Below are positions 2,387 through 62,500 of a DNA stretch of 64,000 nucleotides, one piece after another. Origin of the DNA: Octopus bimaculoides (lineage: Eukaryota); the NCBI RefSeq assembly GCF_001194135.2, contig NC_068985.1, positions 25,443,291 to 25,507,290 on the forward strand, given 5' to 3'. Position numbers and translations under genes: made by a program. How positions within the stretch are numbered: the stretch's first letter is position 1; each line of letters opens with the position of its first letter. The notes under the pieces were generated by a model, which worked only from the letters and a program-made list of their open reading frames with translations, was not told where the DNA came from and did not search any database.

Positions 2387-2569
2387 TTGGTTAGGATTGG
2401 TCACAAATACAGAAAACACACTTGTTCCAACTGAAATATCAGCATTTTTTTCTGTGCTATAAAAACTCTGAGTAAAAATTGGAGGCTGAACGTTTCTGAA
2501 CACTTCAATCCTCATCATAGTTGTGGCTGTCTTTGGAGGTGAACTGTTGTCAGCAACTTTCACTTCAAA
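2387..2569 (-). CDS. cadherin exon A, class Y (exon 36)
   Basis: tgccag|FEVKVADNSSPPKTATTMMRIEVFRNVQPPIFTQSFYSTEKNADISVGTSVFSVFVTNPNQ|gtaaga; 183 nt. Confidence 0.92.
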
Positions 2570-5500
2570 CTGGCAGAAAAAAATAGCAAAAGAAATACAA
2601 AATTAGTATTTTGTGCTTCAATTTGATAAAATGGATGTATTATCCATCAAATCTGGCATTAATTTTCAACAGCAAAATAAACTGAAAATATATGGTTCTT
2701 CTCTAAAATAAAACACCAACAGGAGATTTGAACTTGTGGCTCTTGTCCAATACTTTATTCACCTGGCCACCTCATACTTCTTCAATTATTTATTCAAACA
2801 ATTACAAAATCACTCAGTAAAACATAGGAGCACACTTCTGTAGAAAAGAATTATACAATTGCCTGTCTTGAATTCTTTAATATATACCCAATATTCATAT
2901 TCATTTGCAAAAAGTAAATAATGTACAGGGTGGGGGCAGAGAGGATGGACGTTTTTGAAAAATTCACAAAATCATTAATTTTAGATGCAAACAAATTTTA
3001 TTGACATCAACATGTTTGTACTGAATTAGCATTTGTCAAAATTAAGTGTGGAAAACAACATCCATCATGTGGTGTCCGTTTTCATTGATGCATTTCTGAA
3101 GGCATTCTTGGAAGTTGGCCTCCACACTCTCCAGCATTGCTCTGTTGATTTGGGCAGCTTCCACATGAATAGCTTCCTTCAAATCATCCAATGTATTGGG
3201 CTTATGCTTTGAGGTTTCCTCACAAGAAATAATCACACATGGACAAATCAGGGGACTGAATGGGCTGAGGAATGTCAGCAAACTTGAAAATGAGGCAGTC
3301 ACTAAAGAGGGGGCAAAGAACATCCATTGATGCTCTGACTGTTGCCCCATCCTGCTGAAACCAGACACGTCGAATAGGCATACATTTTCATCATAATTCA
3401 GGCACAAAGTTGTTTATCATTTCACAGTAACCATTTCCATCATTGTTTTCAAAAGAGTAAGGACCAATGATGGCAGCTTTTCCAACAGCACACCAGACCA
3501 TCACTTTTGGGTGGTGCAGTGGTCTTTCATGCAGTTCTCTTGAATTTTCAAGAGCCCAATAACAACAGTTCTATTGATTCGCCATGCCATTGAGATGAAA
3601 ATGAACTTCATCACTCAGTAACAAAATGAGGTTGTCATTTGCCTCAAAAATTGCTTCCATCTGATGTGTGAAGTTAAGCTGCTATGCATAGTCCTATGGT
3701 TTTAGCTGTTGCCTAATGACCAACTTGTATGGGTGGAAATGCAGGTCTTCATGCAAAATACACTTTACCAATTGATTGCTCTGCTCAGTGGAATTTTTCT
3801 GAGCAGAGCAATTCAGACTCCATTTCAAAGCTTGTCTGATACATTCCACATTTTCCAGTGTCCATACCATTCATGGTGCTCCACCAGTCTCCTATTCGTT
3901 AGTGTACCTCATGTACAAAAGGCATTCACCCAACATAAGATTGTGTTACAGGTGGGAACAGCCTGATTTCAGTGAATGTTGAGGTGGTGTCAAAATGCAC
4001 GTTGAACTGCTGTGACAGACTTGTTATTCTTCATATAACTGTCGTAGGCAAACACGATACTTATTGTCCACAGTGCTGTGGCTTCACCTGAAAAGAAAAA
4101 AGTGCTAAGACACCACAGACCAAATGGTACCTGTCAGACATATGTCCCTACCACTGGGGCTGAGTAATAGCCATTTCAAAAACGTCCATCCTCTCTGCTC
4201 CACTCTGTATATAGTGGAAGAGTATTGTGGTCTATTCACTATGTATGATTTCAGTCATACATAACCAGAATTCCAAGAAACTGGAAAAAAAAAAGCAAGA
4301 CTTTGTTCTATTTACACAAAAAGAGAACAGCACAAATAAACAAACAAAAACAAAATCCTGTAAATTATCTTTCAGTGGTAACTTACATTGAAATTACTTG
4401 GACTGCTGGCTGTCAGAGCTTTAATCAAAAGGACATCACCATTGGAATTCACTTTGAAGTAAGATTGTGCTTGAGAGTTAGGAACACCAAATGAAAACAC
4501 AAGTGGATCCTATATGTAAGAATGAAAACAAGAACAGAGAAAATAAATTGTCGGGAAATCTAAAAAGTATTTTCACTTTCACTGTCATCAAATCATTTAA
4601 CAATATTTTATGTAGCAACAGGAAAGGGTTAGTGACAGGAAGGGTATATGACTAAAAGAAACAATACCCCAATATTATACTTGTCTAACCCATGCTATCA
4701 AGGAAAAAAAATGAATGAATATATATATATAGTTTTTTTTTCAATGTATATTACAGCTTTTGAACATAAAATATATCAAGTAATTTTTCTTATCAAACCA
4801 TATGACCACCTCTGTTATGTTAAATCTTTTGATTCCATTCCTACATTCAAATACTACTGGATTTCTGGATATTTGTTAGTGTTTATATCTCTTTAGACCT
4901 AATATTTGTATTCGGTGCATGAATCAATCCAAGTGGCTGTATTCCCTTTCTTTACATCATTATTAAATCATTTTTATTTCTGTTATTAAAGCAGTAAACT
5001 GGCAGAATTGTTAGCATGCTGGGCAAAAGGCTTAGGGTGATTGATTCCATCTTTACGATTTGAGTTCAAATTCCCCTGAAGTCAACTTTGCTTTCCATCC
5101 TTTGAAGATCAGTAAAATAAGTACCAGTTGAGCACTGGGGTTGATTAATTGACTCTCCACCCTTCAAAAATGCTGGCTTTGTGCCAAAATAAGAAAGGAT
5201 TATTATTATTGTAATTATTCATTACAAATATCAACGTATCAATATAGTCTCCTCACTCAATAAAACTGGTTCAACTATGTGGTATTGACATCCTATTGAA
5301 ATTAATAGATATTTATGGAATGAAAATCATTGTTGCTTACGTTGTCATCATCTACAGCATTCAGTCGGAAGAATACAGTGTTGACCGCTAAGTTCTGATT
5401 AATTATCTTTGTATATGGAGCATTGATAAAGTAAGGGCTACCGCTGTTTCTGCTCACTCTAACAATTAAATCAGACTGAATTTTCGATTGAGGTGAGTTT

Positions 5501-59500: not shown

Positions 59501-62500
59501 TCACACACACACACACACACGCACACACATGTACATATGCATATGTTTGTGTTTTTATAAATGCATAATGTGTGCATAGGTGTGTAAATCAGTTTTTCAT
59601 TGTAAATGTGCAATTTTCATATCAATATTGAGTTTTATGCCTGAGAATATAAAATTTATGCTTACCCCATCATTGTCAATGGCTGTTGTATTAACCACCA
59701 TTGTACCTACAGGGCTATGGCTGACTATGGTAACAGTATAACTATTATCCAAGAAATAAGGTCCACTAGGATTCTTCTTTATAGTAATGTAAGCAGTTGT
59801 TTTGCCTACTACTGAAGGGTCTTGGCTGTCATAAGCTTCTATATTTATCTAGAAGAGAAAATTGATAAAAATAATCAAAATATAACATAAATATGAATTG
59901 AAAAGCAATGTATTGGGTCATCCCATAATTAATGCAGTTTTTTTAATACTTTTTTCATTTTTCAAAATTAAGATAAACAAAGTTCTTTTCCAATCTAAAA
60001 TATACTCCCCTTCATTTTCTACAAATGCTCTTCCATCTATTTAGACTTGCAAGACCCCTCTTCCAAAATTCACTTACCCATGACAAAAAATACTCCTCCA
60101 GTACTGTTCTGACCTCATCTACAGAATTCATATTTTTTTCCATCCAGATGATTTTGAAGACTGCAGAATAAATGATAATCAGATGGGGTTATGTCCAGCA
60201 AATATGATGGGTGGGGCACTGTTTCCCATTCAGACTACTCCAGCCTTTGGAATGTCACCCTCACTGAATGTCGCTGATCATTATCCTGGTGGAAGAAGAC
60301 CTTTCGTCTTGAAACCAAAGATGATCATTCTCTGACGTTACACAGGTGTCTATGAATGGTTGAATGACCAAATCCAAGCTTCTCTGCTGGTTCCTCAACA
60401 GTTATGTTGGGATTTTGTTCCACCAGGGTTTGCAGGATGTCCTCGTCAAGCTCTACAGATCTTTTAGGATGAGGCTCTTCTTCTAGGTTGTAGTTTCCAG
60501 CTCAGAATTTCTGGAACCACCATTGACACTGGCTTACACTTATTGTCCGATCCCCACATATTGCATTAATATTCCTCACACCTTCCATTGTGTTGTTGCC
60601 TTTATTGAACTCATAAAGCAAAACATGCTGAATATACTCCTTTGTCACTTCCATTATAGCTTTAAAAAAATAACTTTTTAAATCAAACCGCTCTCTTCAA
60701 AACTTGCACTAAGAATAAGTACTCGGTAAAATTACTACTTGCTTTTATAGCTGATGCAAGTAGTTTATCCCGTCACCTCCATCTTTTAGTTCATGCAATT
60801 GAAAAAAAACTACATTATTTATGAGATGACCTAATAATATGAGTTTATTGTATACAGTGCTCAGGTGCACTACAACTCAAAAATCAAGTAAAGAAAGACG
60901 GTTACGAAAGCTAGAAGTACATGTACAGTGCATGGGAAAAGATATAAAAGACAGAAAAGTGAAGCAGTAAAAGAGCTATACAGATGAAAGGATGACTGAG
61001 GAATGTCAAGATTGGTGTTGGTGAATTTGAGGAAACATTGAATTTTAAATGATGCAGTATCCCAACTGCTAACAATGAAAGTGTGTAGTTTCTTCTATGC
61101 TTTGAGAATTTTGAGCTCAGCAAACATTCCCAAAAGGCATGAGTGCTGTACTGTTTTTTGATTTTATAAACATATTCACAAGTTGTTGAGGTACTGAATT
61201 AAAACAGGGGCCAAAGTTGTTTTTGGAAAGATGGTGGATAATCTTGTGGCATTCTACCAAGTCAGTTGCTGCGAGTTGAAATTTTACAGTGTTGATGTCC
61301 AGAGAAGCTATATATTTAAGATAATGGTAAGTGACCAACAGAGGGTATTTGTTTCACTGCATTTCTCTGCACAGTTTCTAGTTGCTCAATATCCTGGACA
61401 AGATGGAGGTTTCCAGACTGAAGATGCAAAACTGCAAGCGTGGACATACCAGAGCCTTACATAGCTTTAAATAGATAGCTAGTGAACAGCTGTCAAAGGT
61501 TTTACTAAATTGTTACATCAAAACTAAACAGATAGCAGTTGATCTGAAATGATTTATAGATTGGAATTTACAGAGAAATATCTGAAATCTTTTTTAAAAC
61601 TAAATGATATGGAGAAATCTGAAAATACTTTGTTCAATGACAAAATCTGAATCACTTTCCAGTTACTCACTGTGTTTCATTTAATTGATGTCTCTGGGGT
61701 AAACAAAGACAAAATAACTAGATTATGTTTAAAAGAAAATAAGCCAAATTAAATCTTCCAGCATTCCTTAAATTTTACCTTACAAATGAAGATTAGTGAG
61801 GCTATTTTCTTCCTGATAGAGTTTCAGCTTAGTACAATTACAGAAGTCAGGAATCTCATCTGTGGTTGATGAAACTTGCTATTAGTACCATGTAAATGAG
61901 TGCTACCTGTTCCATGGTAAAGTGGGCAGCAAAGGCTAAACTGGTTCCCTCACTTGAGTAGCTTCCTACTCTTATAAGGTTGGTGTTAGGACACCCATCA
62001 GCCCAAAAAGGAAAACCAGTTGAAGAGTGAATGACCTCCTTGCAAGCCAATGACCACCCACTTGGGGGAAAGCAATGGCAAACCACTCCAATATCTTTGA
62101 TAAAAATTAAGCATTTTGAGAAAGTCATAAGAAAGTAACACTATGACTTCTTCCTTTGGGAGAACTTGTACTTTATCAAGAAGACTTTTGTAGTGTCATC
62201 AACATGCTGCAAAAGTATATGATACAATGATGATGATTACTGAGTGTGCCTTCAAGCACAGCAGTGAACTTTAAATTATACCCACTCCTTACGATACTTT
62301 TTGCAGTTTATTGATTATTTCAGGAAGATTTAAGTTCTTTTGGAACAATAAAATGCATCATTCATGACAGAATATAAAGTATCAGCTTTTTTTCCTTTTT
62401 CTTGTCAGTAAACTAGTCCTTTATCAATTCAGTTATAGATAACTCTCAGAATTGTGCCACAGAAGGATATATTAAAGTGTTTTGTTACTAAATTATTGAA

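What the first reader, a model, noticed from the sequence alone, without database searches (positions are those of the whole stretch)
2387..59848. Canonical Ca2+ sites lost at all 18 linkers, with alternating partial retention
Established: cadherin linkers bind 3 Ca2+ through xE and LDRE of the upstream domain, DxNDN, and DxD plus xDxG of the downstream domain. Seen: no DxNDN (replaced by e.g. DRNPS, LRNVN, IRDLQ, KETVK) and no LDRE/LDYE (LKTG, LQTD, LKSD). Domains starting in X exons mostly keep DxD (IDND, TDRD, TDAD, VDND, VDSD, TDAD, VDDD; 7 of 9) and the following xDxG. Domains starting in Y exons mostly lose DxD (only NDPD and ADSD keep it). Inference: partially Ca-bound and Ca-free junctions alternate, giving a periodically bent or flexible filament, as with the known Ca-free bent linkers in Drosophila N-cadherin and PCDH15. 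Many NxS/T sequons support an extracellular location.
Basis: partly seen in the sequence, partly recalled or inferred. Interest (0 to 1): 0.72.

Follow-up and report, generated by a model that had tools for sequence, protein, structure and literature searches.

The report
Giant octopus cadherin without canonical calcium sites
This window holds 18 repeats from the middle of a giant octopus cell-surface cadherin, part of an old invertebrate family that has replaced the usual three-calcium joints between repeats, so joints predicted to hold one calcium alternate here with joints predicted to hold none.

Summary
The minus strand carries 36 phase-0 exons with canonical splice sites. They join into about 1,850 aa forming 18 true cadherin (PF00028) repeats. 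All five assembly gaps lie in introns.

- **Motifs.** No linker has DxNDN or LDRE. DxD survives in 7 of 9 X units and 2 of 9 Y units.
- **Wider context.** A public gene model (P0063) covers this locus but skips 15 exons. Giant single-pass relatives occur in gastropods, a bivalve, a nemertean and a brachiopod.
- **Family signature, 255 linkers.** The site-1/2 ligands D67, D100 and D103 are nearly absent. Arg/Lys at linker position 2 occurs in 71%, against about 1% in canonical giants. The site-3 ligands are kept or lost together.
- **Super-repeat.** The X/Y two-domain unit is shared across phyla. Y junctions are the decay-prone ones family-wide.
- **Best reading.** X linkers bind one Ca2+ at site 3, as PCDH15 EC5-6 does, and Y linkers bind none.

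Calcium binding and bending remain untested. AlphaFold models suggest a non-canonical joint but no sharp kink. Sequons are not enriched. The gene is probably the published 77-repeat octopus sucker cadherin.

The parts
62823..62936 (-). Exon 1 (M, mid-domain). Upstream of the finding's range.
   Evidence: Phase 0, CAG/GT. GTVKYKIV...PQSVT. Identical to P0063 residues 1702-1739.
59666..59848 (-). Exon 2 (J, X type, unit 1). Linker KKNPS, next domain IDND.
56846..56974 (-). Exon 3 (M).
   Evidence: Mis-spliced in public model P0063.
56150..56332 (-). Exon 4 (J, Y type, unit 2). Linker VQKTP, next domain TSSS.
   Evidence: Skipped in P0063.
54624..54749 (-). Exon 5 (M).
53713..53898 (-). Exon 6 (J, X, unit 3). 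Linker NRSTA, next domain VGET (DxD lost).
52022..52135 (-). Exon 7 (M).
49412..49594 (-). Exon 8 (J, Y, unit 4). Linker RQAAK, next domain ESLN.
48352..48480 (-). Exon 9 (M).
47736..47918 (-). Exon 10 (J, X, unit 5). Linker DRNPH, next domain TDRD. Site-3 set complete.
44792..44926 (-). Exon 11 (M).
42776..42961 (-). Exon 12 (J, Y, unit 6). Linker IRDLQ, next domain NDPD. The one Y unit with a complete site-3 set.
41446..41568 (-). Exon 13 (M).
39856..40038 (-). Exon 14 (J, X, unit 7). Linker LRNVN, next domain TDAD.
37898..38020 (-). Exon 15 (M).
   Evidence: Exons 15-27 are skipped in P0063.
35632..35814 (-). Exon 16 (J, Y, unit 8). Linker VRNT-L, one residue shorter. Next domain ADSD.
34833..34955 (-). 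Exon 17 (M).
32768..32950 (-). Exon 18 (J, X, unit 9). Linker DRNMQ, next domain VDSV (half of DxD).
30229..30351 (-). Exon 19 (M).
28281..28469 (-). Exon 20 (J, Y, unit 10). Linker KDSTN, next domain KDTG.
26110..26238 (-). Exon 21 (M).
24465..24650 (-). Exon 22 (J, X, unit 11). Linker DRNPS, next domain VDND.
23365..23487 (-). Exon 23 (M).
21729..21908 (-). Exon 24 (J, Y, unit 12). Linker VKETV, next domain TSSN.
20411..20530 (-). Exon 25 (M).
18671..18853 (-). Exon 26 (J, X, unit 13). Linker RRNLN, next domain VDSD.
15235..15354 (-). Exon 27 (M).
13230..13418 (-). Exon 28 (J, Y, unit 14). Linker TNNNQ, next domain LPRL.
12087..12215 (-). Exon 29 (M).
10416..10598 (-). Exon 30 (J, X, unit 15). 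Linker IRNAN, next domain TDAD. This is the X linker in the structure model.
9370..9498 (-). Exon 31 (M). Tandem donors GTT|GTAAG. The stronger donor ends the exon at 9370 and adds one Val. The alternative end is 9373.
7630..7812 (-). Exon 32 (J, Y, unit 16). Linker VKQSQ, next domain SNNN. This is the fully degenerate Y linker that was modelled.
6477..6608 (-). Exon 33 (M).
5341..5523 (-). Exon 34 (J, X, unit 17). Linker SRNSG, next domain VDDD.
4387..4509 (-). Exon 35 (M).
   Evidence: Skipped in P0063.
2387..2569 (-). Exon 36 (J, Y, unit 18). Linker FRNVQ, next domain TNPN. The gene continues beyond the window.
   Evidence: P0063 ends here.

Best explanation
The window is an internal 60-kb stretch of a very large gene for an atypical single-pass cadherin in an octopod genome. 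It contributes 18 extracellular cadherin repeats, each built from two phase-0 exons.

The gene belongs to an old lophotrochozoan family of giant cadherins that has systematically rebuilt the canonical three-calcium linker:
- The ligands that build calcium sites 1 and 2 are gone: the Asp of LDRE, and the first and fourth residues of DxNDN.
- A conserved Arg has been gained at linker position 2, giving x-R-N-x-x-x-P-x-F.
- The ligands of site 3 are kept as a unit: Asn at linker position 3, DxD, and the top Asp of the next repeat.

The array is a tandem of a two-repeat (four-exon) unit that predates the split of molluscs, nemerteans and brachiopods. The X junction keeps the Arg-Asn linker and the site-3 set. 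It is predicted to bind one Ca2+, as PCDH15 EC5-6 does. The Y junction is the decay-prone one across the family, and in this octopus stretch it has lost nearly everything, so it is predicted to be calcium-free. One-calcium and calcium-free joints therefore alternate along this part of the filament.

Shown: the gene structure, the motif states, the family signature and the ancient X/Y super-repeat. Inferred: calcium stoichiometry, the role of the Arg (probably pairing with the surviving Glu/Asp at positions 11 and 69), and the mechanical consequence, which is greater compliance at Y joints.
For: - Gene model and domain identity.
- Motif table against E-cadherin and CELSR1.
- Same locus: P0063 residues 1702-2803 are identical to the window exons, and its upstream 1,700 aa also have 0 DxNDN and 0 LDRE.
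- Family members in Haliotis, Patella, Plakobranchus, Potamilus, Tubulanus and Lingula. They carry cadherin repeats only, one TM helix and an NPxY-like tail.
- Census of 255 linkers: D67 5%, D100 9%, D103 11%, R/K101 71%, N102 76%, D134 84%, D136 77%, top Asp 87%. A complete site-1/2 set is found in 0/255. A complete site-3 set is found in 169/255 against 110 expected if independent. R101 co-occurs with N102 (OR 13) and with acidic-69 (OR 7.4), and avoids D103 (OR 0.27). Six canonical giants have all ligands at roughly 70-100% (mostly above 85%) and R/K101 in 3 of about 236 linkers.
- Period-2 similarity inside the window: 26.8% vs 22.4% identity, permutation p<=1e-4.
- X/Y alternation in relatives survives masking of all ligand columns: Patella 25/29 alternations p=0.0002, Tubulanus p=0.002, Lingula p=0.01, Haliotis p=0.014.
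- Outside the window, Y junctions lose DxD (34% vs 18%, p=0.004) and the R-N pair (49% vs 25%, p=7e-5) more often than X junctions.
- Y units are otherwise intact domains: 76.8 vs 85.7 bits against an independent family profile, p=0.11.
- Structural precedent: PCDH15 EC5-6 has lost XEX, DRE and DXNDN but keeps DXD and XDX, binds one Ca2+ at site 3 and is flexible (PMC7547225).
Against: - No calcium-binding or structural measurement exists for this protein.
- Linker counts pool related sequences, so the p-values overstate independence.
- Within the window the DxD contrast alone is marginal (p=0.057).
- Two X units (3 and 9) lack a full site-3 set. One Y unit (6) has one, and unit 8 is ambiguous because of a one-residue deletion.
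- AlphaFold models are confident at both junctions and show no sharp kink. The Y joint only departs moderately from canonical geometry. These models contain no ions, no coordinates were available, and no canonical control was run.
- Species identity and identity with the published 77-repeat gene rest on indirect evidence.
Confidence: 0.7

Rival explanations
1. The alternation is only a historical footprint. An ancestral pair of repeats, one with and one without DxD, was copied nine times. The pattern has no mechanical meaning of its own.
For: - Period-2 sequence similarity shows that growth was by two-repeat units.
- Units are not independent samples.
- The number of DxD alternations is not above chance.
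- Elsewhere in the same gene model, and in P0079, nearly all linkers keep R-N and DxD without alternation.
Against: - The repeats are only 22-37% identical and share no DNA-level similarity. Yet the ligand positions have stayed in their X or Y state.
- The same X/Y asymmetry appears in nemertean, brachiopod and gastropod relatives after masking the ligand columns. This implies different long-term constraints on the two joints.
- Y units are otherwise well-preserved domains.
Confidence: 0.25
2. All joints, X included, are calcium-independent. The conserved Arg at linker position 2 fills the former site 1/2 pocket by pairing with Glu/Asp 11 and 69. The retained DxD and top Asp serve packing or bind another partner. 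The filament is stiff regardless of calcium.
For: - R/K101 occurs in 71% of family linkers against about 1% in canonical giants.
- It co-occurs with acidic-69 (OR 7.4) and, weakly, with acidic-11 (OR 2.1), and avoids D103.
- The window's protein is net basic: K+R 173 vs D+E 153.
- AlphaFold gives high confidence and a roughly extended chain without ions.
Against: - The four site-3 ligands are kept or lost together far more often than expected by chance (169 vs 110 expected, odds ratios 8-175), as expected for a working ion site.
- The same ligand subset binds Ca2+ in PCDH15 EC5-6.
- No solved example of Arg replacing cadherin calcium was found in the searched literature.
Confidence: 0.2
3. The repeats are decaying: a pseudogene or an unconstrained repeat array, or an assembly or annotation artefact around the gaps.
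For: - Five N gaps lie within the range.
- The public model of the locus skips 15 exons.
- The calcium motifs look degenerate.
Against: - About 1,850 codons in 36 exons have no stop and are all in phase, with canonical splice signals.
- The gaps are intronic and X/Y parity is kept across them.
- Every unit scores like the family's own units against an independent profile.
- The signature is shared across phyla and includes a gained conserved residue.
Confidence: 0.03

Closest known systems
Protocadherin-15 EC5-6 partial calcium-free linker (solved structures, PMC7547225)
   Same: XEX, DRE and DXNDN are lost (DXNDN is PPNNQ there). DXD and XDX on top of the next repeat are retained. This is the same ligand subset as the X linkers here. 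It binds one Ca2+ at site 3 and adopts several orientations.
   Different: It is a single joint in an otherwise mostly canonical 11-repeat protein. It has no conserved Arg at linker position 2 and no two-repeat periodicity.
Fully calcium-free bent linkers: PCDH15 EC9-10 and Drosophila N-cadherin EC2-3 (PMC5120219, PMC8325961)
   Same: All five motifs are lost, as in most Y linkers here. They are cited as hinges that bend or give elasticity.
   Different: Those are isolated joints with their own stabilising elements and about 90-degree bends. The model of the Y joint superposes worse on them (RMSD 14-15 A) than on extended pairs (6-9 A).
Fat and Dachsous giant cadherins, the names that automatic annotation gives the relatives
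   Same: Very many cadherin repeats on a single-pass membrane protein. Some calcium-free joints let the ectodomain self-bend (Tsukasaki 2014, cited in PMC7547225).
   Different: Canonical giants used as controls keep each ligand in roughly 70-100% of linkers and almost never have Arg101. From established knowledge, Fat proteins carry EGF and laminin-G modules. Pfam finds none of these in the complete relatives P0073 and P0066.
Octopus bimaculoides cadherin with 77 extracellular repeats, highly expressed in suckers (Albertin 2015; Wang & Ragsdale 2017, as cited in PMC6339937 and PMC6062618)
   Same: An octopod genome and an exceptionally long run of cadherin repeats. The locus model P0063 and the same-batch model P0079 already account for more than 50 repeats. 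This is probably the same gene.
   Different: Identity could not be tested because neither paper nor the sequence was available. The accessible citations do not mention the state of the calcium motifs.
Cadherin-23
   Same: A long chain of repeats (27) with several atypical linkers. It is among the best structural matches, and the atypical EC12-13 pair is the best match to the Y-joint model.
   Different: Most CDH23 linkers are canonical three-calcium sites. It has no Arg-Asn linker signature.

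Membership tests
Cadherin superfamily | Tandem extracellular cadherin (EC) repeats matching Pfam PF00028. | tested here: met
   18 stretches, E=6e-140. Best solved relatives are CELSR1, protocadherins, PCDH15 and CDH23. The AlphaFold models are all-beta EC folds that match cadherin structures.
Canonical calcium-dependent cadherin linker | The motif set XEX, DXD, D(R/Y)(D/E), XDX and DXNDN, giving three Ca2+ per linker (PMC7547225). 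| tested here: not met
   0/18 linkers have DxNDN or LDRE. D67 is 0/18, D103 0/18 and D100 3/18.
Partial calcium-free (site-3-only) linker, PCDH15 EC5-6 type | [quoted passage not shown] | tested here: met
   Met at sequence level for 7/9 X linkers and 1/9 Y linkers. Ion occupancy was not tested.
Partial calcium-free (site-3-only) linker, PCDH15 EC5-6 type | One bound Ca2+ observed at site 3. | not testable with these tools
   This needs ITC, ICP-MS or a structure.
Fat / Fat-like cadherins | EGF and laminin-G modules between the cadherin repeats and the membrane. | tested here: not met
   Pfam finds only cadherin-type domains in the complete relatives P0073 (Lingula) and P0066 (Patella). The C-terminus of the octopus gene lies outside the window.
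Fat / Fat-like cadherins | Predominantly canonical calcium-binding linkers. | tested here: not met
   The controls keep each ligand in roughly 70-100% of linkers. This family has 0/255 complete site-1/2 sets.
Clustered-type protocadherins (the octopus expansion) | Six or seven EC repeats encoded in one large exon (PMC6339937, PMC10084454). | tested here: not met
   There are two exons per repeat and at least 18 repeats in the window.
Arg-Asn-linker giant cadherins of Lophotrochozoa (a group delineated here, not a named family) | An x-R-N-x-x-x-P-x-F linker with D67, D100 and D103 absent. | tested here: met
   In the window R/K101 is 13/18 and N/D102 is 11/18. The same holds across P0063, P0079, P0064, P0066, P0067, P0070, P0072, P0073, P0089, P0191 and P0197.
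Arg-Asn-linker giant cadherins of Lophotrochozoa (a group delineated here, not a named family) | An alternating X/Y two-repeat super-repeat. | tested here: met
   Window: same-parity identity 26.8% vs 22.4%, p<=1e-4. Relatives: significant alternation with ligand columns masked.
Arg-Asn-linker giant cadherins of Lophotrochozoa (a group delineated here, not a named family) | A single TM helix and a short tail with an NPxY-like motif. | not testable with these tools
   Seen in relatives. The octopus C-terminus is not in the window or in P0063.
Published 77-EC octopus sucker cadherin | Sequence identity with the reported transcript, and sucker expression. | not testable with these tools
   The papers and the sequence are not held. 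The only evidence is circumstantial.

The most novel reading that the evidence does not exclude
A conserved arginine has taken over the role of calcium ions 1 and 2 in the joints of a whole family of giant cadherins. Only site 3 is left, or nothing at all at every second joint. This would define a new class of cadherin linker and a filament with a built-in two-repeat mechanical period that has been maintained for over half a billion years across molluscs, nemerteans and brachiopods. In octopus it is deployed in the suckers.
Probability: 0.3. Interest if true: 0.8.

Novelty: new variant of a known kind. Interest (0 to 1): 0.62.

Why it matters
Calcium-dependent stiffening of the joints between repeats is the defining physical property of cadherins. 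The known calcium-free or partly calcium-free joints are isolated exceptions that act as hinges or springs, for example in the hearing tip link and in Fat/Dachsous.

Here an entire family of very long cadherins has no canonical joint at all. It also has a gained conserved arginine and a regular two-repeat pattern of predicted one-calcium and calcium-free joints. If this is confirmed, it gives structural biologists a natural system for asking how a cadherin chain is held together without calcium, and how periodic compliance shapes a filament of several hundred nanometres.

It would also give cephalopod biologists a concrete structural hypothesis for the giant sucker cadherin. On the practical side, the relatives are misnamed 'Fat 4-like', and the public model of this locus omits 15 exons.

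Tried and rejected
1. The word-indexed protein search with a 578-aa spliced query gave only hits of 29% identity or less and 1,010 aa or shorter. It seems to miss very long proteins. The exhaustive profile search was needed.
2. The spliced protein could not be submitted to the representative search. I used an alignment of exact exon translations instead. For modelling I used exact substrings of P0063.
3. Exact look-ups of a window ORF and of P0063 in assemblies found nothing, so the locus could not be placed on a named contig.
4. The octopus genome paper, Wang & Ragsdale 2017 and Jin et al. 2012 are not held. Whether the motif loss was already noted for the 77-repeat gene remains unknown.
5. 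P0063 first looked like a 60%-identical orthologue. I rejected this because it is the same locus with exons skipped.
6. MAFFT placed a gap inside the linker that would put Arg at position 100. I rejected this in favour of the ungapped P-x-F-anchored register, which HMMER also gives against CELSR1.
7. The first X/Y classification of relatives was potentially circular, because the profiles contained the ligand columns. I repeated it with those columns masked.
8. Pfam found a transposase domain in only one of eight intronic ORFs tested.
9. Literature searches for arginine-for-calcium substitution in cadherin linkers, and for DXNDN loss in molluscan cadherins, found nothing relevant.

Full report
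**What is in the window**

The window looks like a metazoan genome. It is 34.6% G+C, has a CpG observed/expected ratio of about 0.2, and carries many microsatellites and five N runs. Translating all frames and searching with small profiles found two families of short reading frames on the minus strand that alternate strictly. Each one is bounded by a polypyrimidine-AG acceptor and a GT donor (usually GTAAGT), and every exon starts and ends in phase 0.

The 36 exons are 18 mid-domain 'M' exons of about 41 aa and 18 junction 'J' exons of about 61 aa. They join into 1,851 aa without a stop. If exon 31 uses the stronger of two donors 3 nt apart, the product is 1,852 aa. One more M exon (62936-62823) lies upstream of the stated range, and the gene runs off both ends of the window.

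**Assembly gaps**

All five N runs are intronic. Each sits between an exon of one type and the next expected type. Because all exons are phase 0 and the X/Y order described below is unbroken across every gap, the frame is continuous and no odd number of repeats is missing. A hidden complete four-exon unit would have to fit in less than 1 kb. That is unlikely, but the gap lengths are only estimates.

**Domain identity**

Pfam Cadherin PF00028 matches 18 times with E=6e-140. The nearest solved proteins are CELSR1, clustered and non-clustered protocadherins, PCDH15, CDH23 and Fat4/Dachsous. These are genuine extracellular cadherin (EC) repeats. Each J exon encodes the last two strands of one repeat, the linker, and the first two strands of the next.

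**Checking the observation**

I then read off each ligand position, anchored on the nearly invariant P-x-F after the linker.

- **DxNDN and LDRE.** Neither occurs anywhere in the 1,851 aa. Ordinary cadherin fragments of 800-1,000 aa from the first search carry 3-6 of each.
- **Individual ligands.** D67 is acidic in 0/18 units, D103 in 0/18 and D100 in 3/18.
Every quoted string is present at the stated kind of position.
- **DxD.** It is kept in 7/9 X units and 2/9 Y units.
- **Top Asp.** The top Asp in the following Y exon is kept in 8/9.

First, there are 24 NxS/T sequons against 29.1 +/- 4.5 expected from the Asn/Ser/Thr-rich composition. They are not enriched and add nothing to the case for an extracellular location, which rests on the domain identity. 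Second, the number of DxD on/off switches along the array (11/17) is not above permutation expectation (p=0.24). The real signal is the association with unit type: DxD 7/9 vs 2/9 (p=0.057), and a complete site-3 ligand set in 7/9 vs 1/9 (p=0.015).

**The two-repeat unit**

Same-parity units are more alike than opposite-parity units (26.8% vs 22.4% identity). The effect holds at every even versus odd lag, with label-permutation p<=1e-4. The array therefore grew as copies of a two-repeat, four-exon unit. The copies are old: identities are 13-37% and there is no exon-to-exon similarity at the DNA level.

X-type J exons end a repeat with A-[YF]-[DN]-x-x-x-P and carry an R-N linker. Y-type J exons end a repeat with A-[ST]-D-[NS]-G-x-P-P-[KR] and carry a degenerate linker.

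**Whose gene it is**

An exhaustive profile search with the 18 J exons returned giant proteins. The top hit, P0063 (2,803 aa, UniParc UPI0006955DBA), first looked 60% identical. On reading, its residues 1702-2803 are identical to the window's exons. It is an automated model of this very locus that skips exon 4, exons 15-27 and exon 35, and mis-splices exon 3. Its first 1,700 aa lie upstream of the window and likewise contain no DxNDN or LDRE.

Three lines of evidence bear on the source organism and gene:
- A transposase ORF from the window finds named relatives only in Octopus sinensis and O. bimaculoides.
- P0063's UniParc number falls between an Aplysia RefSeq batch of spring 2015 and the O. 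bimaculoides RefSeq batch of late 2015. This fits the August 2015 deposit of the first O. bimaculoides gene models. This is an inference.
- The literature reports an O. bimaculoides cadherin with 77 EC repeats that is highly expressed in suckers (Albertin 2015 and Wang & Ragsdale 2017, as cited in PMC6339937 and PMC6062618).

The locus is probably that gene. I could not test this, because neither paper nor the sequence is held.

**A family, not a one-off**

Proteins with the same peculiarity occur in:
- Haliotis rubra (XP_046564129, XP_046561621)
- Patella vulgata (XP_050391949, XP_055954929, XP_055954920)
- Plakobranchus (GFN79862)
- the mussel Potamilus (KAK3608192, a mixed type)
- the nemertean Tubulanus (XP_074647699, and P0001 from the first search)
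- the brachiopod Lingula (XP_013411494)

All are automatically named 'protocadherin Fat 4-like' or similar. Pfam finds only cadherin-type domains in the complete ones, with no EGF or laminin-G modules. They end in a single transmembrane helix and a tail of about 100-190 aa with a shared NPxY-like motif. The Fat name is therefore not supported by the architecture.

**Family census**

I read the ligand positions in 255 linkers with intact neighbours, taken from 12 proteins or regions.

| Position | Acidic or expected residue present |
|---|---|
| D67 | 5% |
| D100 | 9% |
| D103 | 11% |
| E11 | 72% |
| E69 | 47% |
| R/K101 | 71% |
| N/D102 | 76% |
| D134 | 84% |
| D136 | 77% |
| Top Asp | 87% |

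Six canonical giant cadherins from the same hit list, including a Nematostella Fat4-like protein, keep each ligand in roughly 70-100% of linkers (mostly above 85%). They have R/K at position 101 in 3 of about 236 linkers.

- No family linker has a complete site-1/2 set (0/255).
- 169 have a complete site-3 set, against 110 expected if the four positions varied independently. Pairwise odds ratios are 8-175.
- Arg101 travels with Asn102 (OR 13), D136 (OR 6.7) and acidic-69 (OR 7.4), weakly with acidic-11 (OR 2.1), and avoids D103 (OR 0.27).

These counts pool related sequences, so the p-values are inflated, but the pattern is clear. The family has removed sites 1 and 2, gained a conserved Arg, and treats site 3 as a unit that is either kept whole or lost whole. 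A gained, conserved residue is not what drift in a dying site produces.

**How old the X/Y pattern is**

I classified relatives' units with X-only and Y-only profiles built from the window. This gave long XYXY runs. Those profiles contain the ligand columns, so I repeated the test using only the part of each unit upstream of the linker, with the LDRE and top-Asp columns masked.

| Protein | Alternation |
|---|---|
| Patella P0066 | 25/29, p=0.0002 |
| Patella P0070 | p=0.03 |
| Haliotis P0067 | p=0.014 |
| Tubulanus P0072 | p=0.002 |
| Lingula P0073 | p=0.01 |

Outside the window, Y junctions have lost DxD in 34% of cases against 18% for X (p=0.004). They have lost the R-N pair in 49% against 25% (p=7e-5). 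The direction is the same in 10 of 11 proteins.

The two-repeat unit therefore predates the divergence of molluscs, nemerteans and brachiopods, and the Y joint is the decay-prone one throughout. The window is the extreme case. Elsewhere in the same gene model, and in P0079 (another model from the same deposit batch), almost every linker keeps R-N and DxD. Y units in the window are otherwise intact domains: 76.8 vs 85.7 bits against a profile built only from other species, p=0.11, both within the family's own range.

**Mechanism**

The closest solved analogue of the X linker is PCDH15 EC5-6. There XEX and DRE are lost and DXNDN reads PPNNQ, but DXD and XDX on top of the next repeat are kept. 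Crystals show a single Ca2+ at site 3 and several interdomain orientations (PMC7547225). The closest analogues of the Y linker are fully calcium-free joints such as PCDH15 EC9-10, where all five motifs are replaced and the joint bends by about 90 degrees (PMC5120219), and DN-cadherin EC2-3 (PMC8325961).

My best reading is therefore that one-calcium X joints alternate with calcium-free Y joints. The role of Arg101 is inferred. Its side chain probably occupies the vacated site-1/2 pocket and pairs with the surviving acidic residues at positions 11 and 69. That would partly replace the stiffening that calcium normally provides. I found no published precedent for this in cadherins.

**Modelling**

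I ran AlphaFold2 on a three-repeat fragment holding one X linker (IRNAN) and one fully degenerate Y linker (VKQSQ), with 25 in-register family fragments as the alignment.
- It gave pLDDT 92.7 and pTM 0.69. Local confidence was 95-97 at the X linker and 86-88 at the Y linker.
- Foldseek places it nearer to extended three-repeat fragments (CDH23, gamma-protocadherins, CELSR1 EC1-4, PCDH15 EC5-7: TM 0.47-0.52, RMSD 8-9 A) than to bent calcium-free ones (PCDH15 EC8-10, DN-cadherin EC1-3, LI-cadherin: TM 0.31-0.35, RMSD 13-26 A).

A two-repeat model across the Y linker alone gave pLDDT 93.1. It superposes over both domains on no solved pair:
- The best TM is 0.45-0.52.
- The closest are the atypical CDH23 EC12-13 (RMSD 6.4 A) and PCDH15 EC4-7.
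- Canonical pairs give 7-9 A.
- The L-shaped PCDH15 EC9-10 gives 14-15 A.

This suggests a non-canonical orientation without a sharp kink. The evidence is weak: the models contain no ions, coordinates were not returned so no angles could be measured, and no canonical control was run.

**Verdict**

Calcium binding and bending are still untested, the sequon argument fails, and the conserved Arg raises a real alternative in which the joints are stiffened without calcium.

The gene itself is probably already published as the 77-repeat octopus cadherin. I found three things nowhere in the accessible literature: the systematic replacement of the calcium sites, the Arg-Asn linker signature, and the ancient X/Y super-repeat with asymmetric decay. 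I rate it a new variant of a known kind (non-canonical cadherin linkers), of moderate to high interest.

Noticed in passing
window 2387-62936 (minus strand), compared with protein P0063: The public automated gene model of this locus (UniParc UPI0006955DBA) omits exon 4, exons 15-27 and exon 35. It replaces the start of exon 3 with an unrelated peptide (AVPLTRLTGTLVIDGV). It therefore lacks about 7.5 of the 18 repeats encoded here.
   Followed up: yes
window 62823-62936 and both window ends: One more mid-domain exon of the same gene lies upstream of the finding's stated end. No further exons were found at 1-2386 or at 62937-64000, so both window ends fall in introns and the gene continues in both directions.
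   Followed up: partly
window 9370-9376: Exon 31 has two donors 3 nt apart (GTT|GTAAG). The downstream, stronger donor adds one Val. It fits the 'Y-x|' exon-end pattern of the other M exons, and the public model uses it.
   Followed up: partly
window about 8260-8510, 24126-24336, 29574-29773, 44295-44511, 45818-45990, 52568-52773, 56467-56666, 58333-58573: A dispersed element of about 200 bp is present in at least eight intronic copies on both strands, at 71-93% identity. It looks like a SINE-type repeat. Its translation gives the recurring 'AEFLQLDALPNANHSE' peptide in the ORF lists.
   Followed up: partly
window 1210-1900, 3045-3900, 60015-60700, 63244-64000: Mariner/Mos1-type transposase remnants lie in introns. 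One matches Pfam HTH_48 at E=3e-15. Windows 1447-1896 and 63584-63996 are inverted copies at 73% identity. Named relatives of one ORF are all from Octopus species.
   Followed up: partly
window 53076-53560, 50880-51300 and 7988-8350: There are tandem minisatellites that translate into repeated peptides. One has a unit of about 114 bp (KALLTSPVVLPHKKHYSPHLWFCHIKSTTHLTCGSAT), one spans about 130 bp at 50.9-51.3 kb, and one has a 27-bp unit (GHKCQKGDA). Many (CA)n, (TA)n and (GA)n microsatellites flank the assembly gaps.
   Followed up: no
relatives P0066, P0070, P0072, P0073, P0191, P0114, P0052 (C-termini): Complete family members share a juxtamembrane 'WW.DDPW' motif just before the single TM helix. 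They also share an NPxY-like motif (AINPTY, AINPIY, SNPVY, AINPAF) near the end of a short cytoplasmic tail, which hints at adaptor binding or endocytic sorting. P0052 also has one canonical DVNDN linker next to the membrane.
   Followed up: no
spliced protein from window exons 1-36: The ectodomain stretch is net basic (K+R 173 vs D+E 153) and very rich in Asn, Ser, Thr and Val. By my recollection, typical cadherin ectodomains are markedly acidic. This was not measured here.
   Followed up: no
protein P0069 (ENA, 3,878 aa) in the representative search: This is another giant cadherin with mostly non-canonical linkers of a different kind: D100 in 5/31, D103 in 5/31 and no Arg101, but D67 in 17/31 and E11 in 28/31. 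It may be a second, independent route to calcium-poor linkers. Its source organism is unknown.
   Followed up: no
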